From contig CDMY01000296.1 of the NCBI GenBank assembly GCA_001179505.1, positions 67,349 to 131,348 of the forward strand: a DNA stretch of 64,000 nucleotides, in the 5' to 3' direction. This DNA is from Vitrella brassicaformis CCMP3155. Taxonomy: Eukaryota; Protista; Chromerida. This document shows, piece after piece, positions 7,171 through 59,772 of this stretch (position 1 is the first letter of the stretch; the number at the start of each line of letters is the position of its first letter). Below the pieces are notes generated by a model. That model had not been told where the DNA came from. It searched no databases and worked only from the letters and a program-made list of their open reading frames with translations. The translations under genes were made by a program, and so were the position numbers.

Positions 7171-10100
7171 TCACGCCATGGAAGCCAGGCTGTCGTCCAT
7201 GGATCCGTTGACGCTGCCCACACCGCTGCCGCCCTGCCCGGCGCCCCCCACTCCAATTCCCATCGCCGCCCCGCCCGTGACGCTGTCGGCCATGTTCACG
7301 TTGCTGCCAGGGGGGTAGTTCTCTCGGACGCTCATGAAGCTGCTCGCCATGTTGCCACCTCCCTGATCCATAGGAGGAGGCCCCAGATGCTGCTGCTGCT
7401 GTGGCGGCCCGCTGCCCACGTCGCTGCCCCTCCCAGCAGCAGGGGCAACGGCAGCAGCAGCAGCAGAAGAAGAAGCATCACGATGGTGCCCCAGGTACTG
7501 GCTCTGACTCCCGCCGATTGGGATGTACTGGAATGAAGAGCTGACAGGTGGTGCGGCTGAGGACGGTGGGACGCTGGGAGGTGCGACAGAGGGTGGGGGC
7601 TGGTGCGGCGCGGACCGCATGGCGGCGTGGTGGTGGTCTGGCATGACCCATGAGGCAGATGGTGCTGGGTGTCCGGCGAATGGCGGCATGGCCATGGATG
7701 AGGCAGGGGGGAACATGGGCATGGCGCCCAGACCCTCATAGCCCGCCTGGGGAGGGCCGGGGGGAAAGGAACCAGGGAGGGGCGGTGGGGGCTGATTGAC
7801 CAAATCAGTACAGTACGCACACAGGATCCTCATCCAGTCACATGTCAGTCATCGAGACGCTCCACCATCTATCTGCCCTCCCTCCCTCCCTCCCTGCCCC
7901 TCTCACTCACCGGCATGAAAGGGAGGCCGGCCATGGTGGGGTCCATCGGGCCACCGGGGAAGCCGCCCGGCGGGTGGTGAGCGAAGGCAGGTGCGTTGGG
8001 CGGGGGTCTCATGGGCGGTGACCTCTGTGACCTCTGGGCCCTCTGCTGACCACCGCCGGTGCGGTTGGGTGGGAGGAGGAAGGACGGCAGGCAGCTGCTG
8101 ACGGTGTCGGCCCACGCCGGCGGCAGCAGGCTCAGGAGCTTCCCGGTGCCGTCCTCTGCGTATGTCCATGGAATGGAATGCAAAACACAACAGGACAGAC
8201 AGACGGGCAGACAGACAGGAGCCCATCATGGATGGCATCATGCTGTGCACTCAAGTGTCGGATGGATGGATGTGTGCCAGCCAATCTTAGTTACCGTGCA
8301 TGACGAAGACGATGAATGCGCCGATGACTGCGACCTGCACGGCCGATGTAAGGATGTCGCCGAGGCCGCCCCAGGCACCCGAATTGCCGTTGCCGGATAC
8401 CTCCACCAAATACGACTGAACAAGCCAGCCAGCAGAGGTGGATGCATTTGGGAATGTGCGTGGCGTCGGTTGTGTCGTTTGTCCGCTCACCATCGGAGGT
8501 TTGATGGCGTCAACCAGGTTGGTGTAAAGTCGGTCGTCAATCGGCTGCTGAGACCTGCACGCACCCACAGACACAGACACAGACACCGACACGGAAGAAT
8601 TCCCACATATGAGCCCTTCCTTTCTTTGGCGGTTCCTCCCTCTGTCTGTTTGTCTCCCCCACTCACTTGAAGAGTGCGGTGGCGAGTGTGTGGATGCCCT
8701 TAGCCGTCCTGCTTTTTTCGGCAAGGACGGCCTGAAGGTCGGCCTCGTAGGCCGCCACACTCTCACCCGCAGCAGCCTGCCCCTGGTGCTGCCTCACGGC
8801 CGTCTCGCTGGGCTGCAGCCGCCTCGCACGCACATCGTCGTCCACCCACACCAGCCGACGCAACGGACGGTATACACCTGTGTGGGCATCATAGCACAGC
8901 ACAGCACAGCACAGCACACGTGTGGACGTATGGACATATTAGTGTAGTGTGTGGTTTCCCATTCTCTCCCCACTCGCTCAACTCAACTCACCTCCCAATG
9001 CGCAGCACTTCCACAGCTCCGCAGCGGCCAGCTCGCCGTCCTCCAGCGACGCCTCGAGAGACGTCTTCAGAGGCGGTGGGACGATGGCGTGGTTCAGTAC
9101 AGCGGGACGGGCTGAGGGACTGGTCTCCTCCTCGCCCTCAGAGCCCTCCGTCTCACCCTTGGGGCTCGTCTCTTCGTGTGCTGTGGCGATGGCCACGACA
9201 GGCTCATCTGCTGCCGTCTCTGTCTGTGGCTGCTCCAGTGCCCCGCCCTCATCGCCTTCCTTCTCCGTGCAAGGAGTCTTCTTGGCGAACCACTTGGAGA
9301 AGAAGCCAGCAGAGGGGGGGGCAGCCAGGGCTTCCGATGAAGTGGCGCCCTCCTCGCTCTCATCTGCGCTGGTCTCCTCGGCTGTCGGCTCGATGGTCTC
9401 TTGCTGCCGTGTGTCGGGTGTGGGGGTATCTTCGACGACAGCCTGTGGCTGCCTGCGCTTGCTGAACAGGTTCACACCGCTCTGGAAGATACCGCTGACC
9501 TAAAAAGAAGAAAGAAACACAGAGGAGGAATTGTCTGGATTGTTGCCGGCCACAATCCAACGATTGATGTATGTATCTATCGCACTTTGTCTGTCTCACC
9601 GACCCTACCCCGCTGAGCATCGATTTCTTGGGCATGACCTCCCCGCCCTCATCGCCATTGCCCTCCTCATCCACAGGGCCATTCTCCACAGCACACATCT
9701 CCGTCCCAATCACCTCGACCGCTGGCTTGTGCTCCTCCTGCTGCGCCACGGCCGCTGGCTGCCCCTTCAAAACGTCCCCCTCTCGGCTGACAGCGCCAGC
9801 GTCATCCTTGTTGCTCGATGGGCGTGTGTATCTGCCCAGGATGGCCCCGAGTGACCACCGGGAGGTGGCGGGCCGTGTGACTGTGTCGTCGGGGAGGGGT
9901 GGAGGGGTCGGCGGGGGCGGGGGTCTAAGTGCCTCTGAGATGCGGATGGAGGTGAGGAGGGCCGTGTGGGTCAGCTGCAGGGCGGTGAGCTCGTCCTGCG
10001 GACGCTGCAGCTTCTTCTGCACGAACTCTGAGGGACGGCAAAGGGCAAAGGAACGGATGGGATGGGATCGGTCGTGGGTGTGTCGTGTCACCCGCCCACT

Positions 10101-10979
10101 CCACCGACCAACCTACCTTGTTTGGCGAGGTTTCTGAGTGCCACAGCGACTTTGCCGTAGACCTCCTCGGCATCCAACACCCACCCCTGCTTGGTCCGAC
10201 GGTAACTGAAGATGCTCACCGGCGCATCTACATCCACACACCACACACACACACAACACACCAGCCTCCATCTCTCCCTCCACAGATGCATCCTATCTAT
10301 GTTGTGGTATGGGTGTCTGTCAGTATTGATTCACCCACCTTTGCCGTCGTCGAGTTGGATCCTAGGGTGTTGTCCATCTTGCTTGACGTACTTGTCGAGG
10401 TAGATGCAGCAGTGGTGCAGCCGGTCGACCAGCGTGTGCCAGTTGAGCTCCAGCAGGGGGGCGCTGATGGCCGGGTGGTCAGTGCACTCGCACAGACGCA
10501 CCAGCACCAGCCGGTTCAGCACAGGTGACTCAATGCGCTGACACAGACAGAGGGAGGGACGACAGACAGACAAGCCAGTCAAATGAATGAATCACGTCGC
10601 AGCGCAGCCAAATGAATGACCAGCCTATCCTGTTCGTTCTGGCTCACTCACGAGTTGCTGTGCCACTTTGGAGACTTGTCCATAGATGCGGATGCGTGTC
10701 GGCCGAATCGCCTCAACACGGTCTGACACACCTGCACACAAACACGCACTCAGTCAAGTCTGGACACCCTACCCACGCCTCTGGCGTTTCTCTCTCATCT
10801 AGCTGGAGGGCGGCAGTGAGTGCGGATGCCATGTCAGCATCGGCACCTTCATAGGTCCAGAGGACAGAGAGCGGTATGTATGAGAGGGGGTTGTTGCCCT
10901 GGTTGATGGACACGCCGCACAAAGCACCGGTGCCGACCACGATGGGCACCTCGAGAAAACGACGGATGGGGTGACGCAT
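7171..10979 (-). CDS. Hypothetical single-pass membrane protein: N-terminal globular region, acidic linker, coiled-coil, TM helix, proline-rich tail
   Basis: About 10 exons that join in frame (e.g. MLSG|VSGIFQ, CALG|VYRPL, LFK|SQQPIDD, VMH|EDGTGK). TM segment DILTSAVQVAVIGAFIVFVMH; tail rich in PPG/PPP. Start codon uncertain. Confidence 0.6.
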
Positions 10980-41671: not shown

Positions 41672-41971
41672 NNNNNNNNNNNNNNNNNNNNNNNNNNNNN
41701 NNNNNNNNNNNNNNNNNNNNNNNNNNNNNNNNNNNNNNNNNNNNNNNNNNNNNNNNNNNNNNNNNNNNNNNNNNNNNNNNNNNNNNNNNNNNNNNNNNNN
41801 NNNNNNNNNNNNNNNNNNNNNNNNNNNNNNNNNNNNNNNNNNNNNNNNNNNNNNNNNNNNNNNNNNNNNNNNNNNNNNNNNNNNNNNNNNNNNNNNNNNN
41901 NNNNNNNNNNNNNNNNNNNNNNNNNNNNNNNNNNNNNNNNNNNNNNNNNNNNNNNNNNNNNNNNNNNNNNN
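41672..41971. other. Assembly gap (300 N), followed by a poly-C run
   Basis: N run seen directly. Confidence 1.
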
Positions 41972-43147
41972 CCCCCCCCGCCCCGCCTCGCCCCTCCCCC
42001 CCATGCAGGCAGCCCGCCCCTTCTGTCACTCAGTGACTGAAAACGCGCTCACCGCCCATTTCGCAGCCCCGTCGTGAATTGGTCGTGTGTTGCGTGCGAG
42101 TGTGCAAAAGTGATCACCTTGCTACTCCGACGGTGTGTAGCTGTGCAAAAGTGATCTGCCCTATTACATATACCCACCTACAAACCTTACCCGGAACACA
42201 CGTCGGATTGTGAAAGAGACTCTGTGTGTCAGGAGGCAGGAGCTAACCCGAAACAACACATGGACAGCGCCGTGATGTGATGTGTGTAGCTGGCCCCCGA
42301 GAGACATACATGAAGAACCATAGACACACGCAGATGAAAGCGGTGCGCACGCATGCATGCATGCATGTTAAATAACATGGACATGCAGGGAGGAAGAGGG
42401 AGGGAGGGAGGAGGGGATCGAGAAATCGAGAAAAGGAGAAGGATCGATTGAGAAAGCGGGAGAGCCCTAGCCCTCCGTTTCTCTCTCTTCGCTTCTCTTC
42501 TTTTGGTCGGTCGGTCTACATCGGTCGGTCCTAAATGGTTTCACTCACTGTCAATCACTGACTGACTTGCGATTCACCCACCCCCCCACTCAACACTCCC
42601 CCAGGCACCGCACCCTTACCCACCAACCAATCAACGGCAAGCAAGAAAGGCGCCGCGAGGCAGCTGCTGCCACACACATGACCTGTCTATCTTCTGTCCA
42701 TCCATCCAGGAGATCCATCCATCCATCCATCTCATGTCTTGGTCAAGACAGACAGGTGAGTGAGATGTACCGCTCAGTGCGGTACTTTCAAACACGGCAG
42801 CCAGCAAGGGAAGGCAGGTGACACGAACTCATTGCATCAATCAATGGCAGCCACTCGCACTCACATGATATAACAAACAACATCACACCACTAGCTGAGC
42901 AGAGAGGAGTTGCTCACCGACCCACCGGCCCACCGACCGATGTAAACTGCACGCCGCGCCTCATCCCTCCATCCCTCCCTCCCTGCAACATCTCGCGTAC
43001 ATCCAGCCATATAAACCAAATATACACTTCCCGCCACCCCATCCCCTCCAAGCCAACCATCGACTCATCCCTCGCCCAATCGTTCAAACCAGACAGGCGA
43101 AGTAAATGAAAACCACTCGTCCGTCATCTTCCCCCCCCCCCCCCCCC

Positions 43148-43447
43148 NNNNNNNNNNNNNNNNNNNNNNNNNNNNNNNNNNNNNNNNNNNNNNNNNNNNN
43201 NNNNNNNNNNNNNNNNNNNNNNNNNNNNNNNNNNNNNNNNNNNNNNNNNNNNNNNNNNNNNNNNNNNNNNNNNNNNNNNNNNNNNNNNNNNNNNNNNNNN
43301 NNNNNNNNNNNNNNNNNNNNNNNNNNNNNNNNNNNNNNNNNNNNNNNNNNNNNNNNNNNNNNNNNNNNNNNNNNNNNNNNNNNNNNNNNNNNNNNNNNNN
43401 NNNNNNNNNNNNNNNNNNNNNNNNNNNNNNNNNNNNNNNNNNNNNNN
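43148..43447. other. Assembly gap (300 N), flanked on both sides by poly-C
   Basis: N run seen directly. Confidence 1.
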
Positions 43448-45671
43448 CCCCCCCCCCCCCCCCAAACCCACATGCAGCCCCGCCGCCAGGAGGTGAGTCA
43501 GTGTGGTGGGTGGGCAGGGATATATGGGTGAGGTCGGGGAAGGGAAAAACGACTGCCAACACGAACCAATATAAAACATCAACTAGTCCATGCACGGGCA
43601 TCGCATCGGTCGATCGGCTGTGTCGTTGAAAGGCTGGCTGCGTGGGTCGGACGGACGGGACGGACAGGTGCGTGGGCGTGCCAGAGGCAGAAAGGCAAGT
43701 TAGGCAGGCAGGCAAGCTGACAGAGTCTCGAAGGGCCGCTCGCCGCACCGTGCTCGCACGCACATCACATGGCGGCAAAAAATGAAAAACGAGGAGGGGG
43801 GCTGCAATGAATGCTAACGAAAAAAAGGCAATTAAGGCAACAGAACAACCAGCAATTGTCGTGTCGAGCGAAAAGGGCCTGTGGGCTTGTGGCGGTGGAT
43901 CGTCGGCCGGCTTAAATCATCAGCGACACGCACACACACACGTATGAAATGCTATGCGTAGGAGCACCCTGTCAGTCAGGAAGTAATCATGTGTTTGTAC
44001 GCAAGTAAGACAACGGAAGGCCTGCACTCACCGAAGGTCAGGTCGGCCGCCAGGAGCTCAGGAGCCCTGTAATAACAACATAAGAAACACCAGGGTTTGT
44101 ATCACACCAACCTCAACCCAACCAGGCCAAAACAATTGCACAAATAAATAAACACGCAAGCAATGATATACGAGCAACAATCACGAGCGATAAAACACCG
44201 ACCGACCGACCGATCTTACAGGGCCCCACTCACGTCCTTCTCCGACAGACATTTACTTACTTCCCTCCCTCCCTACCTCTCTCTCTCATCTGTCTGTCCG
44301 AGCGTGTGCGTAGGTGCGTGTGAGCATTGTACGTATGAGCGTGAGTGAGTGCATCACATGGCATGAGTGAGCGTGAGTGTGGAGGGCGGAAAGAAATCAG
44401 TAATTGGCCATGTACGCACACAGGCAGGGAGGGAGACAGACGGCCACTTACGCGGACAGAGATGTGGATATATGTATGCATGTCATGTGTGGCTGATTCA
44501 TGTGTAAGCATGTACGTATGCATTCCATGTACGCATCCATACAGCCGCAGCCGCCAGTGTATGTCGATAAAGCAGGAATCCATCCATGTACACGAGCGCG
44601 CAGGAGCAACCAATCCAGCGATCGAGCCAGAGCGAGGGAGAAGAACACTTAGAGCAAGTATGCGATGAATGAAGCAGGCAGCCAAGCCGAGTCAAATCAC
44701 GCCGAAGAAGCCCCTCTCTGGCCCACCGTCTGTACAAAATAGTGGGGGGTCTCGGCCAACCCTTGGGAAGAAGTGACACACACACACACACAGATAGATG
44801 GCACATCATCACATCATCACATCTCATGGAGGAGCAAAACCAGCGTTTAGATATGGGAATACGTGTACGGGGTGGCAGTGCATGTGCGATCGGTACCTAC
44901 ATGTATGTGTACCGATGGATGCACCTTCACCTTCGTAGCACCAACTTGCCAATGAATGAATGAATGTATACAGACAGACAGATGTGTATGTATGGATGTA
45001 TGTATGTATGTAGGCAGACAGACAGACATGCAGACGTGCCTCCCTCCCTGCTTCCATCCATCGATCCTTCAGACACTTCACCAGACCGCAATGCATCACA
45101 TCACATTACACACACCACACCACGGGCTGCACCAATTCTGACCCGCTCGAGTTGCCCGTAGACACACATCCATGTACCTCCGTACGTACGCACCTGCGAT
45201 CCGTCCCCCCTTCATTTATCCCTTCATTCACTGATTCATCTCTGTCTGTCTGTCTCTCTTCCTGTCTGTCTGTCTTGATAGCCTCTTCGCAACTGACGGA
45301 GAAAATGGTACGAAATGCCCGTCACAGCAGGCAGCCGAACACCTCACTGACAGCTCCCTCCCTCCCGGCCCGTCCATCCATCCATCGATCCATCCGTATG
45401 CATACATCAAAACTGCATTGACAGTCAACCAAACACCGACCGCATCACTCGCACCACATCGCACCACACCACACCACACCGTCACCTGCCTGCCTTCAGC
45501 CATCGGTCACTGTCTCCATTACACACGCACCACCACACCATCAGCACATCACACCATACATCGTCACATACACGCTCAAGCAAGTCCAGACAGACACCAT
45601 TCATTGCGATCCACAAGGCAGACACCCAAACCAGCATGTGCCCCCTCCCCACTGTCGTGGGTGGGCCTCAT

Positions 45672-48600
45672 TCACCGACTCCCGCCTCCCGATAGGGCGT
45701 CCAGGCGTTCCAGCGGCTGCAGGCCGGTGTAGCACTGGCCTTCAATGACCCACGAGGGAATGCCGCACGACGGCGCGCACTCGTTGGTCAGTGTGGGGTC
45801 GTTGACGCACTCGACATAGTCGATCTTGTCAGCTGCATCACCGAACATGGCCTTTTGCTGCGCGCAATAGGGACACCAGTTCATGCCGTACATCACAGCT
45901 CCTGCCATGCCATGCCACACCAACACAGACACATACACACAGTGTTGTTGATTGCGCCATGCCCAACGGGCACTCCCCCCTTGCCCGCCCATTCAGCTCA
46001 CCGACGCTGTCGAGCTGCTCAGCCACCCTGGTTCCCATGTCCTCACCACCATCACCATCACCATCAGCATCAGCATCGTCGGGAGGTGGGGTGGTGCCAT
46101 CCGCCACCTGCAGCCACCTCCTCGCCCCACGCATGTTCCCGATTTTCACATCGACACCAACAGTGGGCGCACTGCTCAGCTGCCGAGTGGATGCGATAGC
46201 CTCTAGTCGCTCCAATGGCTGCAGGCCGGTGTAGCACTGGCCTTTGATTGTCCATGACGGGATGCCACACGCAGGCGCGCACTCGTTGGTCAGTGTGGGG
46301 TCGTTGACGCACTCGACGTAGGTGATCTGGTCGACGGCATCACCGAACATGGCCTTCTGCTGCGCGCAGTAAGGGCACCAGTTCATGCCGTACATCACAG
46401 CACCTACAGGAAGTAAGACGACAACAGACAAATGAAAAGCGCCACGTCAGCCAGCCAGCGGTGTCTCTTATGCCGCGTACGTACCAGCGTCCTTGAGTTT
46501 CTCTGCCACTGCTGTGGCATTCGGCGCCCCCTGCAGCTGTCTTGTTCTCATCCGTGTGGTGTTGTCCATGTACTCGTGGTCAAAGTTGCTCCACTTGGCC
46601 AGTGTCTCGAGTGACTGCACGCCCGTCATCGAGTCGACCGTGTTGTTGACCGTCCGGTTGGAGGCGTCATTGAAACGGAACCATGAGGGCGTCTCCTTTA
46701 TCTGCAAACACACAGATGAATGAAACCAGATGGTGTGCGTGGGTGGGGTGGGGGAGAGGTCAATCAAAGCGGGCTGCTGACTGACCTCCATGACTTCGCA
46801 TTCCTTGGGGGCTGCCTCGCACTCGACGTAGATCTGGTGCTTCCTGAGCTTGTCGAAGGCCTCGCCGAACTCGGTCTTCTGTTTCTTGCAGTAGATGCAG
46901 AAACGAGACCCGTACACAACCACATCTGTATGAGACCCCACACACCACACGAGACAGACCACCCAATACAATACAATGCATAACCACTTTCCTTCCCCGC
47001 CACCATTCCATATATTACGTACGTACCATTTTCCTTCATGTGATCAGCAAGGCCGTGTGCGAAGGCCTGGCGGGCCGCATCGAGAGTGCTCCACTGGAAG
47101 CCTGTCGCCTCAGCGACGCTCTCCGGGTCGAGCAGGTCGAAGTGCATGGCGCCGTCGATGCTCCAGACGGGCAGGACGGGTGGCAGGTTGGCGGCCTCGC
47201 ACTCCCTGGGGGTGACCTCGCAGTCGACGAAGGCGATGGCCTCGAAGGACTCACCGAAGGACTCCTTAATGCTGTCGACCTTCGGATCGCTGCCCTGGCC
47301 GTACAGCTTCGCACCTGTGTGGGTTTCAATCAACGTGTGTGTAAGTCAGTACACAGGGGGCAGATGCTCTGCTCGTGTCTGGTCTGTTGACTGACTGACC
47401 TTTCTCCTTGAGGTGGGCAACGAGCTCTGCAGTGGGCTGCTGGTCGGTCTGCTGCGGGCTGACCGCCCCAGCGCCAGACACCATCACGCCCGCCAGGCCG
47501 TCCTCATCCACTCCTTTGGTCTGCTGGTGCGGGCGGAGCTCATTTCCCTGCAGCAGCGTCACGAGCTGCTCGAGTGTGAGGATGCCCTCGTAGTGCTGCC
47601 CGTCGATGACCCATGTGGGGTAGGAGGCGATGTTCTTGTCGAGGCACTTCTGCGGCTGGGCGTCGGGGCCGCTGCGGGCGCACTCGACGTAGTTGGGCTT
47701 GACGGACTCCCACTCCTGGCCGAAGAGCTTCTTCTGCTTCCGGCAAGCTGAGCACAGCCATGATCCGTAGATGTTCGCATCTGCGTGGCGTGAAACGACA
47801 CACAGCCAGAAGTGATTGATAGATACATGGATGGATGTAGTCAGTCAGTGAGTGCTGTGGTTGGAATGTGAGGGTGTGTAGTGAGTGCTGTGGAGTGGTG
47901 CAGTGGCCCACCAGGAACCCCACCCACCTTTGTCCTTGATGAGTTGTGCCGCCATTTTGGCCTGCTTGCGCTCCGAGTCTTCGGTGAGTGTGAAGGACTT
48001 GCCGCCAGCTGTGGAGAAGTAGTCGGCAAAGGTGATGTTCTGCGCGGCGAAGTCACTCACTGTGGTCACACCTACACACACACAAAACCCAACAGATGAT
48101 ATGTGGGAGGCCTCTGTCTGCTCGATGTCCTCGTGTTGTGTAGTGTCGGCTCGCTTGGCAACTCACCGAGTACAGTGGTTCTGAATTGGACCCAAGCGAA
48201 GAGGGCCATGACACCTGCCATGGTGGTACATGTCAGGACAGCCATCTTGGTCGGTGTGACGACTCGGGTGGTGGTTGCGATGACGAAGAGGATGAAGCAC
48301 ACGCACGCACTGATGATGCAGTAGGGACAAAACTCCTGGATGTAGTAGCCCATCAAGATCATCAAGTAACAGCTGCATGCACCAAACCACCACAACAGCC
48401 ACACCACACCACACCACACCCGTCAGTCAACACACAGACAGACACACATGGAGCTTCCGATCGCCTCCCTCCTCCCCGCGGCCGCCCCGCCCACCTGAAT
48501 GTGGCCATGGCGGCGACGCAAGCCAGGATGAGCACCCGATTGACCCGCTCCCACTTGCCCCTCCCGCCATCGCTCAGGCACTCGCACACACCGTCGCAGC

Positions 48601-49579
48601 CCTCAGTGCTCGAGCTGTCCCACTGCTTGATGGGCTGCACCGACGAGGACTTGGCCAGACTCAGTGCGCGCCGCTTGCGCGCCACCATCCTGACCATCCG
48701 CGTCATCAGAGGCACCAGAGTGAGGCACGCCAGAGCCACGTAGGCCAGCAGCCCGAAGGCAGCCACGGGGAAGCCCAGGAACTCAGAAAACGGACCTGAT
48801 GGACATTGATAGTAGATTGACAGACATGTCATGTACACACCTGCTTGACCAGCAGGGTGTGACGTTCATTAATCACTCTCTCTCATACGCTCGCTCATCT
48901 ATATATATGGCCCCTGACTGACTGCCTGACGTCTTGACGTACCATCGAGGACAGCGCTGCATCCGCCGGTTGCGCAGCCTCCCTTGTTCTTCTCACTCGA
49001 GAAGTGGCGCGCCGTTAAATAGAGAGACTCGCCCACACCCCCCAGCGCAATCACGCCCATGACCACACGCACGCTCCAGTGCCACCCACCCCAGGCGATG
49101 CCTGCTGCTGCTGCCAGTTCTGCCCTTGCTGCAGCAGTGGGCCGCTGCTTGCCTTGATGATGATGTTTGTGCTGGTGGTGCTGGCCAGGCTGAGTGGTTT
49201 TCTTCACTCCCTTGGGCATCCGCCGACTGCCGGGCAGCTGATACGGCCCCTCTGGAGGCCAGTGCTCGTCCGTGTTGGCCTCACTGCAGACCTTGGGGGT
49301 GACAGAGTAGACTGTAGGGGTGCTGCTTTCAGGGGCGGCCATGGCCTCCTCGACCAGCCCGGAAAGGGCCTCGCTCCGGGGGCTGTCGACCAGGTGGTCA
49401 ACGGTCTGCTGGATCCGCCGCTCGTTCTGCCTGTTGGTGTCTTGGGGGTTGAAGATGGCGTCAGCAAAGCTGGCCTGGTCGTCTGAGTCGAGCATAATGC
49501 CGGCGACGTCCGTCATGCTGGGAGTTTGGGTGAGGTGCGACGAGGGCGTCTGGATCTGCTGGATCTGCTGATCTTCCAT
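45672..49579 (-). CDS. Vitamin K epoxide reductase (VKOR/LTO1-like) fused to five tandem thioredoxin/glutaredoxin-like domains
   Basis: VKOR: TM1 VVMGVIALGGVGESLYLT, loop CATGGCSAVLDGPFSEFLGFPVAAFGLLAY, CxxC FCPYCIISA, TM5. Trx domains: IYGSWLCSACRKQK; LYGQGSDPKV (no Cys); VYGSRFCIYCKKQK; MYGMNWCPYCAQQK twice. Each has YVEC (FVDC in domain 2) and a P-S/T/V-W motif. All five domain-module lengths check in frame. Confidence 0.92.
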
Positions 49580-49748
49580 TCTCAGTAATGCTGATGGTAT
49601 CGTACTCCACCGCCTATCCGTATCTCCTTTGAGCACTAGAGAAATAGCCGTTAAGGTGGTCTAAGCTCGCAAGATCTGAGCTGAGCTCGCTGACGGCACC
49701 TCAACGTCTCCACTGTCTGGTGCAGCAGAGAGACCTGCTGGTCACGAT

Positions 49749-50770
49749 ATGCGGAGAAGAGTGTGCATGCGGCAGGATTCGTCGATTTGCAACAGGCATG
49801 GACAACTGCAGTGGAGGAGAATGGACGGATATTCGATGAAGGCACCGGACGCCGGCAGGAGGGCTGAGGTCATGAGGAGCGTCGAGACACAAGCTGCGAC
49901 ACGGCGACATGAATCCACCCACAGACCACCGTGAGAGAGATGCTTGACAGACAGCAAATGCTGGCAAACTCCTGGCATGCTCTTTGTGCGCGCGTGTGTG
50001 TACATGTGGCTCTTTCTTTCCGCTTAGGCAGCTGCATTATGCTGGGACCGTGTGCCGTGACCCGTCTGCACTGATGAAGAAACCCGCAAGAGCCAAAGGC
50101 ACGTTTTCTTGCAAGGCAAACCCGCCCAGCCGTCTCCCCAGCTGTCTGTTTATCTCCCCCTCTCTCTGTTCCATGCCATGCACGCAGACGCTGTTCGGGC
50201 CACCCTGGCGGTTCTTGAGAGCAAGACACCGAGTGAGAGGACTCCCTGTCTATGACTGCAGACGCATCTATCATGAAGGGCCCTTCATGCAATCAATGCA
50301 TTGTCATTCGTGCAGCCGTCGAGAGAAGAGAGGATCTCGAGTATGATGGCGCCTCAGCTGCTCGTCCGCCAATGCCGCCGACACAGCGGAGAGGCAGGAG
50401 TGTGGGGCCGCATGCCGCCGCCATCCGGAAGGCTGTCAGCTCTTTGTCGGTCTCCAAGTTGAACACGACCCGTGAAGAATCGGTGACCCGCGAGACAGAG
50501 GAAGGCACATACACACACACTCCTTCATCTAATTGATTGGTTCCCTTGGTGTGCCTTCAGGAGGTTGGGGCTTTTTACGACTGGTTGGCCTCGCATGGTC
50601 TGGAGGGGTACATGGCCCAGCTGCTGTCGAATGGATTCTCAATAGACGTATGTAAAAGGGAACGAACATGCATACGAGGGGCTGGCAACCAGACGCATCA
50701 GCCCACACTGTTGCTACGCGCAGGTGCTGTCGCGGGGGTGTGATAACGGGGAGCTCCATAGGCGAATGAG
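49749..50770 (+). CDS. Possible hypothetical protein with SAM-domain-like exon
   Basis: Exon 50561-50648 EVGAFYDWLASHGLEGYMAQLLSNGFSID resembles a SAM domain N-terminus and has good splice sites. The remaining exons are not resolved. Confidence 0.3.
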
Positions 50771-51231
50771 AGAGGTCCTCACCTTCCAAACAGGTAGGCA
50801 CTAGTGTCAAGCGCACACGAGTTCACACTACATGAAGCAGCGATATCGATTGCCCTATGGTCTGGTGGAATGCTGTCTGCAGAGGCCGACTGCAGGCGAC
50901 TGTTGAAAGCGGTCAAGGCTCTGGCGGGCCCTGAAAGGCACTGAAAGAGTGTGTCGTAGGCCAGACCCGTATCATCGATAGCGCCACACGTGCATGTATG
51001 TACGGACATCTCCCGATGGATGGATGGATGGACACGCCTCGTTTGTGTCTTGCTACGACTCTCTCTCTACCTTGGAGTGCCGATAAATGTTGTTTCGCAT
51101 AGCCAAGCGGGAACTGCGTATACTGTGCATGGCTGTCTTCGTCACTATACTTGCATGGCAGTGACGAGCGAACAAGGGAGACGCCCCCCAGGACGACCCG
51201 CGTCTCGCCGTTTGTAAATTAATGCGGCGGA

Positions 51232-53037
51232 ATGATGTTTGTGGTGGTTTTGGCTTCTCTGACCTGTTGTGCGGTGGGTGCTCCATTGCCATGGTGGCAG
51301 GAATCTTCACTCGCCAACGCCAAGTCCATGGCGCTGACGTACGGGCTCTTCCATGAAGATGAAGGCACACTCAGATCAGATCTGGCATGCACTGTGTGCA
51401 TGGATGGCGTCATGCAGCATGGACAGGGAAGCTAAACGATACTTCTCTTACTCGGAGGGACACATTGCAGGTAGGTACATACGTACAGTACTGCATGGTG
51501 GCACACTCACATCTGTTTCTCTTGTGGGTGGATCTGTTGTGGTATCGGTGCTGTCTGCAGAGAGCGAGAAGGTTCTGCAGATGTACTTCGAGTACTCAAG
51601 GAACCCCCTCGTCAAAACGGTGAGGCACAATCAGCCGGCCCATTGGCACACATTGGATTGTGTGCGACCCGGCCCGGCCCTGTCTGTGCCGTTTGTTTGT
51701 TTGTGTCCCTTCCATTGCAATGGATTGGCAGATATATGAGACCGGCTTCAACGGTGGCCACAGTAGTGCCATCTTCCTCACGGCCAACCCCACCGCACGG
51801 GTCATCTCATTCGACATCGGACAACACCCATACACACAGGGCAACGTACGGACGGACGAGTGCACACACACACACACACACACACAAGGCTCCGCTGCTG
51901 CTGAATGGATGGATGGATGGATTGCGATGCAGGCGGGAGTGTTGAGGGGTCTGTATGGCGAGAGGTTCCAAGTGGTGTGGGGCGACTCGCGCAACTCCAT
52001 CCCCTACATGCAGCGAATGATGCCGCAACTCAGGTGTCCACTCATGGATGGATGGATGGACGGATGGATGGATGGACGGATGGCCTGTGTGTGTTGACGT
52101 GTGTGCAGGTGCGACCTCTTCAGCGTGGATGGGTCACACTCCTTTGAGGGTGCGTTGGGAGACCTGCTCAACTTCCACAGAATGGCCTCGTGCAGAAACT
52201 GGATACTCATGGTACAGCTTACATGCCCTGTCTGTCTGTCTGTGACAATTCATCTGTGGTGGGCAACTGTTTTGGCGCCTGTCTGGTGGCAGGACGACGC
52301 CGGCTGGCGGTCGGTGAATAGGGCGTGGCAGACGGCAAAGGACCTGGGCATCGTCACACAGCTCGAGTGCTTCGCTGACACGCACGGAGCGCTCAACTAC
52401 CCATTCATCGACACGCCCGACAACCGCACGTACGAACGAAGAGTCAGTCCCCCCGGCCCCNNNNNNNNNNNNNNNNNNNNNNNNNNNNNNNNNNNNNNNN
52501 NNNNNNNNNNNNNNNNNNNNNNNNNNNNNNNNNNNNNNNNNNNNNNNNNNNNNNNNNNNNNNNNNNNNNNNNNNNNNNNNNNNNNNNNNNNNNNNNNNNN
52601 NNNNNNNNNNNNNNNNNNNNNNNNNNNNNNNNNNNNNNNNNNNNNNNNNNNNNNNNNNNNNNNNNNNNNNNNNNNNNNNNNNNNNNNNNNNNNNNNNNNN
52701 NNNNNNNNNNNNNNNNNNNNNNNNNNNNNNNNNNNNNNNNNNNNNNNNNNNNNNNNNNNNGAGTGCATTCGACAACGGGGCGCGACAGCTGAAAGAGCTG
52801 GAGCAGCAGATCATCAGGGCGGCACAGATTGGGGGTGGGGGTGGGGGGTGGGCCGGCAAGAATGCGACAGCATGTAGTGGACAGCAGAATGGGACGGCGT
52901 GCAGCCAGCAGACGCAGCAGACGGCAGAGGGAGAGCGAGACACCGCCAGAGGAGGTCTGCCGCCTTCGTATGACGCTACGTGTCGGTGGTTTGCTGAGCG
53001 GCCGGTGTCGACACGGACGCTCGTCAGGCCCGTGTAG
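51232..53037 (+). CDS. Secretory-pathway class I SAM-dependent methyltransferase (Methyltransf_24-like)
   Basis: Signal/anchor MMFVVVLASLTCCAVGA; IYETGFNGGHSSAIFL, VISFDIG, VVWGDS, CDLFSVDGSHSFEGALGDL, LM|DDAGW. Interrupted by the gap at 52461-52760; the tail frame after the gap is inferred. Confidence 0.8.
52461..52760. other. Assembly gap (300 N) inside the methyltransferase gene
   Basis: N run seen directly, preceded by a C-rich run. Confidence 1.

Positions 53038-53528: not shown

Positions 53529-59772
<6,244 letters not shown>

What the first reader, a model, noticed from the sequence alone, without database searches (positions are those of the whole stretch)
46480..49579. The VKOR-Trx5 protein appears retargeted from the thylakoid to the secretory pathway
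Seen: the N-terminus (MEDQQIQQIQTPSS..., about 160 hydrophilic aa) has no signal plus transit peptide, unlike PRK and the Rieske protein in this same window. The post-TM5 region carries N-glycosylation sequons NITF, NRTV, NNTV, NTTR and NATA. Inference: the Trx array faces the ER lumen or cell surface, so a cyanobacterial-type VKOR-Trx would have been repurposed for ER oxidative folding alongside or instead of Ero1.
Basis: inference. Interest (0 to 1): 0.7.

Follow-up and report, generated by a model that had tools for sequence, protein, structure and literature searches.

The report
Plastid-type VKOR-thioredoxin gene lacking plastid leader
An expressed gene of the alga Vitrella brassicaformis encodes a cyanobacterial/plastid-type disulfide-forming membrane enzyme (VKOR) fused to five thioredoxin-like modules, and it lacks the signal-plus-transit peptide needed to reach the thylakoid, so it probably works in the ER or a related compartment, though this is not proven.

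Summary
A 10-exon minus-strand gene (49579..45672, about 800 bp longer than the finding's span) encodes an LTO1/cyanobacterial-type VKOR with five TM helices and five Trx-like modules. Transcriptome contigs confirm two of its introns.

The N-terminus has no signal peptide. The first hydrophobic segment is VKOR TM1, at about residue 165. A divergent plus-strand spliced transcript starts by 49694, and no ATG lies between it and the annotated ATG, so a missed leader exon is unlikely.

The Vitrella paralogue (CEL94418.1, VKOR plus three Trx modules) also lacks a leader. The Chromera velia VKOR was published as red-algal derived and "plastid targeted: No". A diatom-type LTO1 has a classical bipartite leader.

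The five sequons exist but are weak evidence. They number 5 against 2.3-2.8 expected (P=0.13), and only the cluster of four in exon 8 stands out (P about 0.02). N-glycoproteins are also imported into complex plastids, so sequons cannot separate ER from plastid.

- ER/endomembrane lumen: about 0.45.
- Outer plastid compartments via a recessed signal anchor: about 0.2.
- Thylakoid by a missed or unusual signal: about 0.25.

"Instead of Ero1" is untested. This scan had already noted this locus and the paralogue. It is a new variant of a known kind, of moderate interest.

The parts
45672..49579 (-). Whole coding region of the VKOR-Trx5 gene. It has 10 exons and all 9 introns are GT-AG. Exons: E1 49579-48943, E2 48795-48495, E3 48372-48167, E4 48071-47928, E5 47780-47400, E6 47314-47027, E7 46925-46786, E8 46701-46485, E9 46403-46002, E10 45901-45672. 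The product is about 981 aa.
   Evidence: Manual model. Introns E7|E8 and E8|E9 appear as joints in the RNA-like runs X1 and X2 and are absent from the DNA runs X3 and X5.
49088..49579 (-). Hydrophilic N-terminal tail of about 164 aa with no signal or transit peptide. It is predicted to be cytosolic.
   Evidence: Hydropathy and charge. The single-sequence AF2 model has mostly low confidence, with helices at residues 32-81 only. The tail has 14 K/R and 20 D/E.
49580..49693 (-). Only 114 bp separate the start codon from the neighbouring divergent transcript. The stretch contains no ATG. An in-frame TAG lies at 49661-49663, and the ATG context is GAGAATGG.
   Evidence: sequence.
49694..51052 (+). 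Divergent plus-strand spliced transcript. Its introns are 49931-50027 (GT-AG), about 50099-50187 (GC-AG), 50482-50559, 50648-50723 and 50791-50879 (GT-AG). It occupies the DNA where an upstream leader exon would have to lie.
   Evidence: Joints in run X1, table 5. Splice dinucleotides were read.
49019..49087 (-). VKOR TM1, the candidate signal anchor. It is followed by the loop cysteine pair CATGGC at 48959-48976.
   Evidence: Pfam VKOR profile positions 2-46 match here. It aligns with the paralogue and with the diatom LTO1.
48183..48769 (-). Rest of the VKOR core. TM2 is 48707-48769. A basic TM2-TM3 loop (12 K/R) contains CDGVCEC. TM3 spans the E2|E3 intron. TM4 carries the active-site CPYC at 48318-48329. 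TM5 is 48183-48245.
   Evidence: Pfam VKOR profile positions 49-87 (E2) and 103-133 (E3). Coordinates were checked and loop charges.
47401..47778 (-). Trx module 1 (CSAC at 47743-47754), the module directly behind TM5.
   Evidence: Hits the Synechococcus VKOR-Trx structures 3KP8/3KP9 at E=2.7e-16. Alignment A2.
47028..47312 (-). Trx module 2. It has no CxxC (DPKV at 47277-47288) but keeps the second cysteine pair and the cis-Pro/Trp motif.
46486..46923 (-). Trx module 3 (CIYC at 46888-46899), split by a phase-0 intron. A 13-residue insert after the P-x-W motif carries NRT (46651-46659) and NNT (46639-46647). The linker to module 4 carries NTT (46555-46563) and NAT (46513-46521).
48031..48039 (-). 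Sequon NIT in the linker between TM5 and Trx module 1.
45675..46401 (-). Trx modules 4 and 5 (CPYC at 46366-46377 and 45864-45875). They are a recent tandem exon duplication, 83% identical in nucleotides and 86% in amino acids over the Trx part.
   Evidence: Module 5 hits 3KP8 at E=1.3e-15.

Best explanation
The gene encodes a quinone-linked disulfide-generating membrane enzyme of the plastid/cyanobacterial LTO1 lineage (VKOR core, fifth TM helix, 3KP8-type Trx domain). In Vitrella its Trx domain has been multiplied to five modules, four with CxxC. The protein has no cleavable signal peptide or transit peptide. The likeliest route is therefore co-translational insertion into the ER membrane, with VKOR TM1 acting as a recessed N-in signal anchor. 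This leaves the tail of about 165 aa in the cytosol. It puts the VKOR loop cysteines, the CPYC active site and the whole Trx array in the lumen of the endomembrane system. There the Trx modules would take electrons from substrate thiols and pass them through the loop cysteines and CPYC to a membrane quinone, as shown for the Synechococcus enzyme and for LTO1. Shown here: the gene structure, its expression, domain identity, absence of a leader and the topology signals. Inferred: ER insertion, lumenal residence and oxidase function.
For: The gene model and its transcription rest. VKOR Pfam pieces are colinear over profile positions 2-133, with a summed score of about 53 bits against a cut-off of 27.5. 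The loop Cys pair and CPYC are present. Trx modules 1 and 5 hit 3KP8/3KP9 at 1e-15 to 1e-16. The nearest ESM Atlas clusters of the paralogue are streptophyte LTO1 and cyanobacterial VKOR-Trx. No N-terminal hydrophobic region exists, unlike PRK, the Rieske protein and the diatom-type LTO1 P0151. ATG 49579 is the first AUG below a divergent plus-strand transcript that starts by 49694. The paralogue CEL94418.1 also lacks a leader: its transcript starts 14 nt upstream of its ATG, and a divergent GST gene starts 60 nt away. Positive-inside charge is 12 K/R in the TM2-TM3 loop against 3 in the TM1-TM2 loop. The Chromera velia VKOR is listed as red-algal in origin and 'Plastid targeted: No' (PMC3516247). 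ER-resident VKOR proteins exist in a related lineage: T. gondii TGME49_249760 is ER by hyperLOPIT (PMC7670262 supplement). They also exist in vertebrates (bioRxiv 10.64898/2026.03.26.714578 introduction).
Against: There is no localisation data. RNA contigs stop at 49534, 45 nt short of the ATG, so the 5' end is not directly seen. Photosynthetic eukaryotes are expected to need a thylakoid-lumen disulfide catalyst, and both LTO1-type genes known in this genome would then be elsewhere; I could not search the whole genome for a third copy. TM1 is only moderately hydrophobic (19-residue Kyte-Doolittle maximum 1.59). There is no KDEL/HDEL or other retention signal at the C-terminus (...LSGGGSR). Sequon enrichment is not significant overall.
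Confidence: 0.45

Rival explanations
1. The protein is a plastid-periphery protein. It enters the ER through TM1 as a recessed signal anchor and is then sorted by a motif in its long cytosolic N-terminal tail to the outermost plastid membrane(s). The Trx array would sit in the space between the outer membranes, where it could oxidise or isomerise disulfides of proteins in transit to the plastid.
For: The sequence features are the same as for the ER reading. Apicomplexan relatives target leaderless membrane proteins to outer apicoplast membranes through a recessed signal anchor plus a cytosolic N-terminal tyrosine (PfoTPT, PMC4956234). Thioredoxin-family proteins ATrx1 and ATrx2 act in the apicoplast periphery and in import (PMC5823475 and PMC4219833, listed). 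The cytosolic tail of about 165 aa is unexplained under a plain ER role.
Against: No sorting motif was identified or tested. The tail is not conserved with the paralogue. No homology to ATrx1 or ATrx2 was shown.
Confidence: 0.2
2. The protein is still the thylakoid LTO1 of Vitrella. Either the true 5' exon with a bipartite leader was missed, or a non-canonical signal delivers it to the thylakoid, with the Trx array in the thylakoid lumen.
For: It has LTO1-type ancestry (PMC3516247). Tandem arrays of the same Trx domain type in other algae carry plastid/lumen-like leaders (P0001, P0007, P0009, P0012, P0049), so multi-module lumenal relays exist. The ATG itself is not covered by RNA contigs. A minus-strand ORF at 49742-50005 reads ...VAACVSTLLMTSALLPASGAF..., which is signal-peptide-like, and frame-compatible GT/AG pairs to exon 1 exist. 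The need for lumenal disulfide formation in PSII biogenesis is established knowledge for LTO1.
Against: The signal-peptide-like ORF lies inside DNA that is transcribed and spliced on the opposite strand. All of its candidate donors are weak, and 844 frame-compatible combinations arise by enumeration alone. No joint links exon 1 to upstream DNA. The N-terminal 60 aa are acidic, unlike transit peptides. The paralogue and the Chromera gene also lack leaders. No leaderless route to thylakoids of four-membrane plastids is known.
Confidence: 0.25
3. The leaderless N-terminus is an artefact of a decaying or mis-modelled gene, or the protein has inverted topology with the Trx modules in the cytosol.
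For: No intact model of this gene was found in the protein libraries. One Trx module has lost its CxxC.
Against: All ten exons are open with canonical splice sites. The gene is transcribed and spliced. The catalytic cysteines, the second cysteine pairs and the cis-Pro motifs are conserved in the modules. The positive-inside rule supports the canonical orientation.
Confidence: 0.07

Closest known systems
LTO1 / AtVKOR (Arabidopsis) and diatom-type LTO1 (P0151)
   Same: VKOR core with a loop Cys pair and a CxxC. A fifth TM helix. A C-terminal 3KP8-type Trx-like domain with CxxC plus a second Cys pair. A shared insertion between TM2 and TM3 and the MATFS motif seen in the diatom protein.
   Different: Five Trx modules instead of one. 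No plastid presequence: P0151 has a signal peptide, an 'ING|FSIP' site and a transit peptide. A hydrophilic N-terminal tail of about 165 aa.
Synechococcus VKOR-Trx (SynDsbAB; PDB 3KP9, 3KP8, 4NV2/5/6)
   Same: Best solved-structure match of Trx modules 1 and 5, at E 1e-15 to 1e-16. Same order: VKOR, then TM5, then Trx.
   Different: The bacterial protein is 291 aa with a single Trx domain. The Vitrella protein is eukaryotic, intron-rich and about 981 aa, with a multiplied Trx domain.
Vitrella brassicaformis CEL94418.1 (P0152), the paralogue in the same genome
   Same: 41-46% identical VKOR core. LTO1-type Trx modules. Leaderless N-terminus. Head-to-head neighbour gene.
   Different: Three modules (CGHC, CGHC, CEPC) and 643 aa, with a short N-tail of about 50 aa. 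Its sequons NMT and NGS lie in the cytosolic TM2-TM3 loop.
Vertebrate VKORC1 / VKORC1L1 and T. gondii TGME49_249760 (ER VKORs)
   Same: A VKOR-family enzyme in the ER membrane with a lumen-facing active site that takes electrons from Trx-fold partners. This is what the window's protein would work like if it is ER-resident.
   Different: These are small 4-TM proteins with separate partners (TMX, TMX4, ERp18, PDI) and belong to a different VKOR subfamily. The window's protein is of the cyanobacterial lineage with covalently fused partners.
Tandem LTO1-type Trx arrays without VKOR in other algae (P0001, P0003, P0005, P0006, P0049)
   Same: Two to five repeats of the same Trx domain type, some lacking CxxC.
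   Different: They have no VKOR domain. P0001 (from an internal Met at residue 37) and P0049 show hydrophobic plastid-leader-like N-terminal segments, while P0003, P0005 and P0006 are N-terminally incomplete or were not assessed.

Membership tests
VKOR family (Pfam PF07884) | Match to the VKOR profile over the 4-TM core | tested here: met
   Three colinear pieces cover the profile: E1 positions 2-46 (14.5 bits), E2 49-87 (21.2 bits) and E3 103-133 (17.8 bits). Each is below the 27.5-bit cut-off only because introns split the domain. The rough sum is about 53 bits. The paralogue scores 84.5 bits.
VKOR family (Pfam PF07884) | Loop cysteine pair after TM1 and CxxC at the start of TM4 | tested here: met
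   CATGGC at 48959-48976 and CPYC at 48318-48329. Both align with P0151 and P0152.
LTO1 / cyanobacterial VKOR-Trx fusion | Fifth TM helix followed by a 3KP8-type Trx-like domain with CxxC and a second Cys pair | tested here: met
   TM5 is at 48183-48245. Trx1 and Trx5 hit 3KP8/3KP9 at E 1e-15 to 1e-16. The columns G20, C33, C45, P54 and W56 are nearly invariant in A2.
LTO1 / cyanobacterial VKOR-Trx fusion | Single Trx domain | tested here: not met
   Five modules are present, one without CxxC.
LTO1 (thylakoid lumen thiol oxidoreductase of plastids) | N-terminal plastid targeting presequence (signal peptide plus transit peptide in complex plastids) | tested here: not met
   There is no hydrophobic N-region and the start is acidic. 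No upstream ATG or exon is supported. The step with SignalP, ASAFind or DeepTMHMM was not available.
LTO1 (thylakoid lumen thiol oxidoreductase of plastids) | Thylakoid membrane localisation | not testable with these tools
   This needs microscopy or fractionation.
ER oxidative-folding VKOR (VKORC1-like role) | ER membrane residence with a lumenal active site | not testable with these tools
   Only the topology signals (positive-inside) and the lack of a plastid leader bear on it.
N-glycoprotein of the secretory pathway | N-x-S/T sequons on the lumenal side, in excess of chance | tested here: inconclusive
   Five sequons are all lumenal and none lies in the 379 cytosolic or membrane residues. 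Overall P is 0.13. The exon 8 cluster has P about 0.02. The paralogue has two sequons in a cytosolic loop.
N-glycoprotein of the secretory pathway | Occupied glycosylation sites | not testable with these tools
   This needs a PNGase F or Endo H shift, or glycoproteomics. Occupancy would not exclude a plastid location (Peschke 2013 via PMC8678454).

The most novel reading that the evidence does not exclude
In chromerids, the red-alga-derived thylakoid enzyme LTO1 was moved out of the plastid into the endomembrane system and expanded into self-contained VKOR-(Trx)3 and VKOR-(Trx)5 relays. These would give the ER or the plastid periphery a quinone-driven disulfide pathway parallel to Ero1. The thylakoid lumen would then be served by some other, unknown oxidant.
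Probability: 0.35. Interest if true: 0.65.

Novelty: new variant of a known kind. Interest (0 to 1): 0.45.

Why it matters
If the location is confirmed, this would be a clear case of an endosymbiont-derived thylakoid enzyme redeployed to the host's secretory system. It would also be a natural one-polypeptide "DsbB plus several DsbA" machine in a eukaryote. It would further raise the question of how chromerid thylakoids make lumenal disulfides. Because chromerids are the photosynthetic sisters of apicomplexan parasites, it bears on how redox folding and plastid-import pathways of those parasites arose. As it stands, the result is a well-supported absence of a targeting signal plus an untested inference about location.

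Tried and rejected
1. Word-index protein searches with the paralogue's VKOR region, the whole paralogue and exon 1 found only one useful relative, the diatom-type LTO1 P0151. No model of the window's own protein appeared.
2. Two scans of metagenome contigs, one with exon 1 and one with a TM3-TM5 alignment of the two paralogues, returned nothing. No alveolate orthologue N-termini could therefore be compared.
3. Enumeration of hypothetical upstream exons gave 844 frame-compatible combinations. The most signal-peptide-like one (ORF 49742-50005) lies in DNA spliced on the opposite strand and has poor donors. I rejected it as evidence and kept it as the basis of the thylakoid rival.
4. Single-sequence AlphaFold of exon 1 had mean pLDDT 45 and was uninformative beyond possible helices at residues 32-81.
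5. The hyperLOPIT supplement lacks TGME49_203720, the larger Toxoplasma VKOR-family protein. Only the small ER VKOR TGME49_249760 was found.
6. Literature searches for Ero1 in chromerids and scan notes on Ero1 or glycosylation in this genome were blank.
7. I at first misplaced the in-frame upstream stop. It is TAG at 49661-49663.
Full report
**What is there**

Reading the minus strand between 45400 and 50400 gives a 10-exon gene. All nine introns are GT-AG.

| Exon | Coordinates |
|---|---|
| E1 | 49579-48943 |
| E2 | 48795-48495 |
| E3 | 48372-48167 |
| E4 | 48071-47928 |
| E5 | 47780-47400 |
| E6 | 47314-47027 |
| E7 | 46925-46786 |
| E8 | 46701-46485 |
| E9 | 46403-46002 |
| E10 | 45901-45672 |

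- The finding's lower bound (46480) is the end of exon 8. Two more exons, encoding Trx modules 4 and 5, follow down to the TGA at 45672-45674.
- The product is about 981 aa.

**Expression and model check**

- Two small runs that behave as transcriptomes (X1, X2) carry contigs that skip exactly the E7|E8 and E8|E9 introns.
- The two DNA runs (X3, X5) read straight through these introns.
- X1 also covers parts of E1, E3, E4 and E5 without any other joint.
- The gene is therefore transcribed, and two introns are confirmed.
- Coverage is low and fragmentary. The most 5' contig ends at 49534, 45 nt short of the ATG.

**Identity**

- Pfam's VKOR profile is matched colinearly by E1 (positions 2-46), E2 (49-87) and E3 (103-133).
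- The loop cysteine pair (CATGGC), the active-site CPYC at the start of TM4 and a fifth TM helix are all present.
- Behind TM5 lie five Trx-like modules. Their motifs are CSAC, none (DPKV), CIYC, CPYC and CPYC.
- All five modules keep the second cysteine pair and the P-x-W motif.
- Modules 1 and 5 hit the Trx domain of the Synechococcus VKOR-Trx structure (3KP8/3KP9) at E 1e-15 to 1e-16, and nothing else significantly.
- Modules 4 and 5 are a recent exon duplication, 83% identical in nucleotides.
- A full HMMER scan with module 5 found 1472 relatives.
- The top hits are tandem arrays of the same domain in other algae. None contains a VKOR domain, and some (P0001, P0049, P0007, P0009, P0012) have hydrophobic, leader-like N-termini.
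- The only VKOR-containing multi-module relative found is P0022/P0152. This is Vitrella brassicaformis CCMP3155 CEL94418.1, 643 aa, with VKOR plus three modules (CGHC, CGHC, CEPC).
- That protein matches an earlier scan note on "another piece of the same genome". The window is therefore from Vitrella brassicaformis, and the species has two paralogous VKOR-(Trx)n genes.
- Their VKOR cores are 41-46% identical. Both share with a diatom-type LTO1 (P0151) the TM2-TM3 insertion and the MATFS motif.
- The paralogue's nearest ESM Atlas clusters are streptophyte LTO1 and cyanobacterial VKOR-Trx.
- Burki et al. 2012 (PMC3516247) show the Chromera velia VKOR as an example of red-algal endosymbiotic gene transfer.
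- "Cyanobacterial/plastid-type" is therefore confirmed.

**The missing leader**

- The N-terminus (MEDQQIQQIQ...) has no hydrophobic core. The table compares the best 10-residue hydropathy mean within the first 35 aa.

| Protein | Best 10-residue hydropathy |
|---|---|
| VKOR-Trx5 (this gene) | 1.27 |
| PRK (same window) | 3.24 |
| Rieske protein (same window) | 2.52 |
| Diatom-type LTO1 P0151 | 3.32 |

- The first 30 residues carry three acidic and no basic residues. This also differs from a transit peptide.
- The first membrane segment is VKOR TM1, at about residue 165.

Could a leader exon be hidden upstream?

- In X1, a contig begins at 49694. It is spliced at 49930|50028 and further on, with GT..AG (one GC..AG) read on the plus strand.
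- A divergent plus-strand transcript therefore occupies the upstream DNA.
- The 114 bp between it and the start codon contain no ATG.
- The reading frame is closed by TAG at 49661-49663.
- The ATG has A at -3 and G at +4.
- No joint leaves exon 1 towards upstream DNA.
- A minus-strand ORF at 49742-50005 does contain a signal-peptide-like stretch ending in ASGA|F. Frame-compatible splice pairs can be enumerated for it.
- That ORF lies within the oppositely spliced transcript and has weak donors. Such enumeration yields hundreds of combinations by chance.

The paralogue gives an independent control.

- Its MMETSP transcript starts 14 nt before its ATG.
- In the genome (CDMY01000218.1), a divergent GST gene starts only 60 nt away.
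- It too begins with a hydrophilic stretch of about 50 aa before TM1.
- The Chromera VKOR is listed as "Plastid targeted: No" at full alignment coverage.
- A modelling artefact in all three genes is unlikely.

**Topology**

- The TM2-TM3 loop carries 12 K/R, against 3 in the TM1-TM2 loop and 2 in the TM4-TM5 loop.
- This fits the canonical VKOR orientation solved for Synechococcus. The N-terminus and the TM2-TM3 loop lie on the cytoplasmic side. The loop cysteines, the CxxC and the Trx domains lie on the far side.
- Insertion through TM1 as an N-in signal anchor into the ER would reproduce that orientation, with the array in the lumen.

**The sequons**

- All five sequons exist, and all lie after TM5.
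- NIT is in the TM5-Trx1 linker.
- NRT and NNT are in a 13-residue insert specific to module 3.
- NTT and NAT are in the module 3-4 linker.
- These are plausible surface sites, but the statistics are weak.

| Region | Observed | Expected | P |
|---|---|---|---|
| All 594 post-TM5 residues | 5 | 2.3-2.8 | 0.13 |
| Exon 8 (72 aa) | 4 | 1.31 | about 0.02 |

- The paralogue has two sequons in its cytosolic loop.
- Sequons also cannot separate ER from plastid in an alga with a complex plastid. Proteins pass through the ER lumen on the way, and N-glycosylated plastid proteins are documented in a diatom (Peschke et al. 2013, as cited in PMC8678454).

**How it most likely works**

- Shown: this is an expressed LTO1-type VKOR with five fused Trx modules, no bipartite leader and canonical topology signals.
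- Inferred: it inserts into the ER through TM1, and the lumenal Trx modules oxidise client thiols.
- Inferred: electrons then pass through the VKOR loop cysteines and CPYC to a membrane quinone. The CxxC-less module 2 may act as a spacer or as a substrate-binding unit.
- ER VKORs are known in vertebrates and in Toxoplasma, where TGME49_249760 is ER by hyperLOPIT. The mechanism would be a fused, plastid-derived variant of something known.

My probabilities:

- General ER/endomembrane location: about 0.45.
- Outer plastid compartments, reached by the recessed signal-anchor route described for apicoplast membrane proteins (PMC4956234; ATrx1/2 in PMC5823475): about 0.2.
- Thylakoid by a missed or non-canonical signal: about 0.25. 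The main argument for this reading is biological. A photosynthetic cell should need a lumenal disulfide catalyst, and I could not search the genome for a third VKOR.
- An artefact or inverted topology: the remainder.
- Nothing here speaks to "alongside or instead of Ero1".

**Novelty and limits**

- The scan had already noted the five-module fusion at this locus, and the paralogue elsewhere in the genome.
- The literature already lists the Chromera VKOR as plastid-derived but not predicted to be plastid-targeted.
- New here is the combined evidence that both Vitrella paralogues are truly leaderless, and the resulting specific localisation hypotheses.
- I rate this a new variant of a known kind, with moderate interest.
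- The joined protein model was not searched, folded or run through predictors.

Noticed in passing
window 49694-51052 (+): A divergent plus-strand transcript has at least five introns, one apparently GC-AG (about 50099-50187). Its first exons carry only short ORFs, so they look like a long spliced 5' UTR or a non-coding RNA. Downstream ORFs (50252-50743) have no Pfam match.
   Followed up: partly
window 48386-48448 and 51015-51048: GGTGT-type microsatellite-like repeats, one inside intron 2 of the VKOR gene, attract very high depth and many false joints in all four runs. They are a genome-wide simple repeat.
   Followed up: no
window 48596-48616 (exon 2, TM2-TM3 loop): The cytosolic TM2-TM3 loop is about 57 aa, far longer than in the bacterial enzyme. 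It contains a CDGVCEC cluster, possibly a metal or redox site on the cytosolic face. The paralogue's loop lacks these cysteines.
   Followed up: no
window 45675-46401 (-); P0181: Exons 9 and 10 are a young duplication (83% nucleotide identity), and DNA contigs break there. An ENA contig product (P0181, 162 aa) is exon 9 read into its intron, with a few substitutions. It probably comes from another Vitrella strain.
   Followed up: partly
P0001, P0003, P0005, P0006, P0049 (one search hits): Other algae encode arrays of two to five LTO1-type Trx domains without a VKOR domain; whether they are soluble was not tested. P0001 and P0049 have hydrophobic, plastid-leader-like N-terminal segments; P0003, P0005 and P0006 are N-terminally incomplete or were not assessed. 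Some modules lack CxxC. As far as I know this is an undescribed family of candidate multi-module lumenal thiol oxidoreductases.
   Followed up: partly
L003 1063-3940 (-) and 4001-8002 (+): The paralogous VKOR-Trx3 gene also sits head to head with its neighbour, a GST-family gene, with 60 nt between the start codons. The annotation also lists a separate 219-aa 'thioredoxin domain' product downstream (8974-10407). That product clusters at 90% identity with part of the VKOR protein, which suggests a local duplication or a split model.
   Followed up: no
PMC7670262 supplement; PMC3616887; PMC12607534: Toxoplasma has two VKOR-family proteins. TGME49_249760 (169 aa) is ER by hyperLOPIT. TGME49_203720 is enriched in oocysts and sporozoites and is absent from the stored hyperLOPIT tables. 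Whether the latter is the orthologue of the chromerid VKOR-Trx genes is unknown.
   Followed up: partly
window 41690-41990, 43150-43450, 52400-52750, 58100-58400: Runs of N flanked by short G or C runs are assembly gaps.
   Followed up: no
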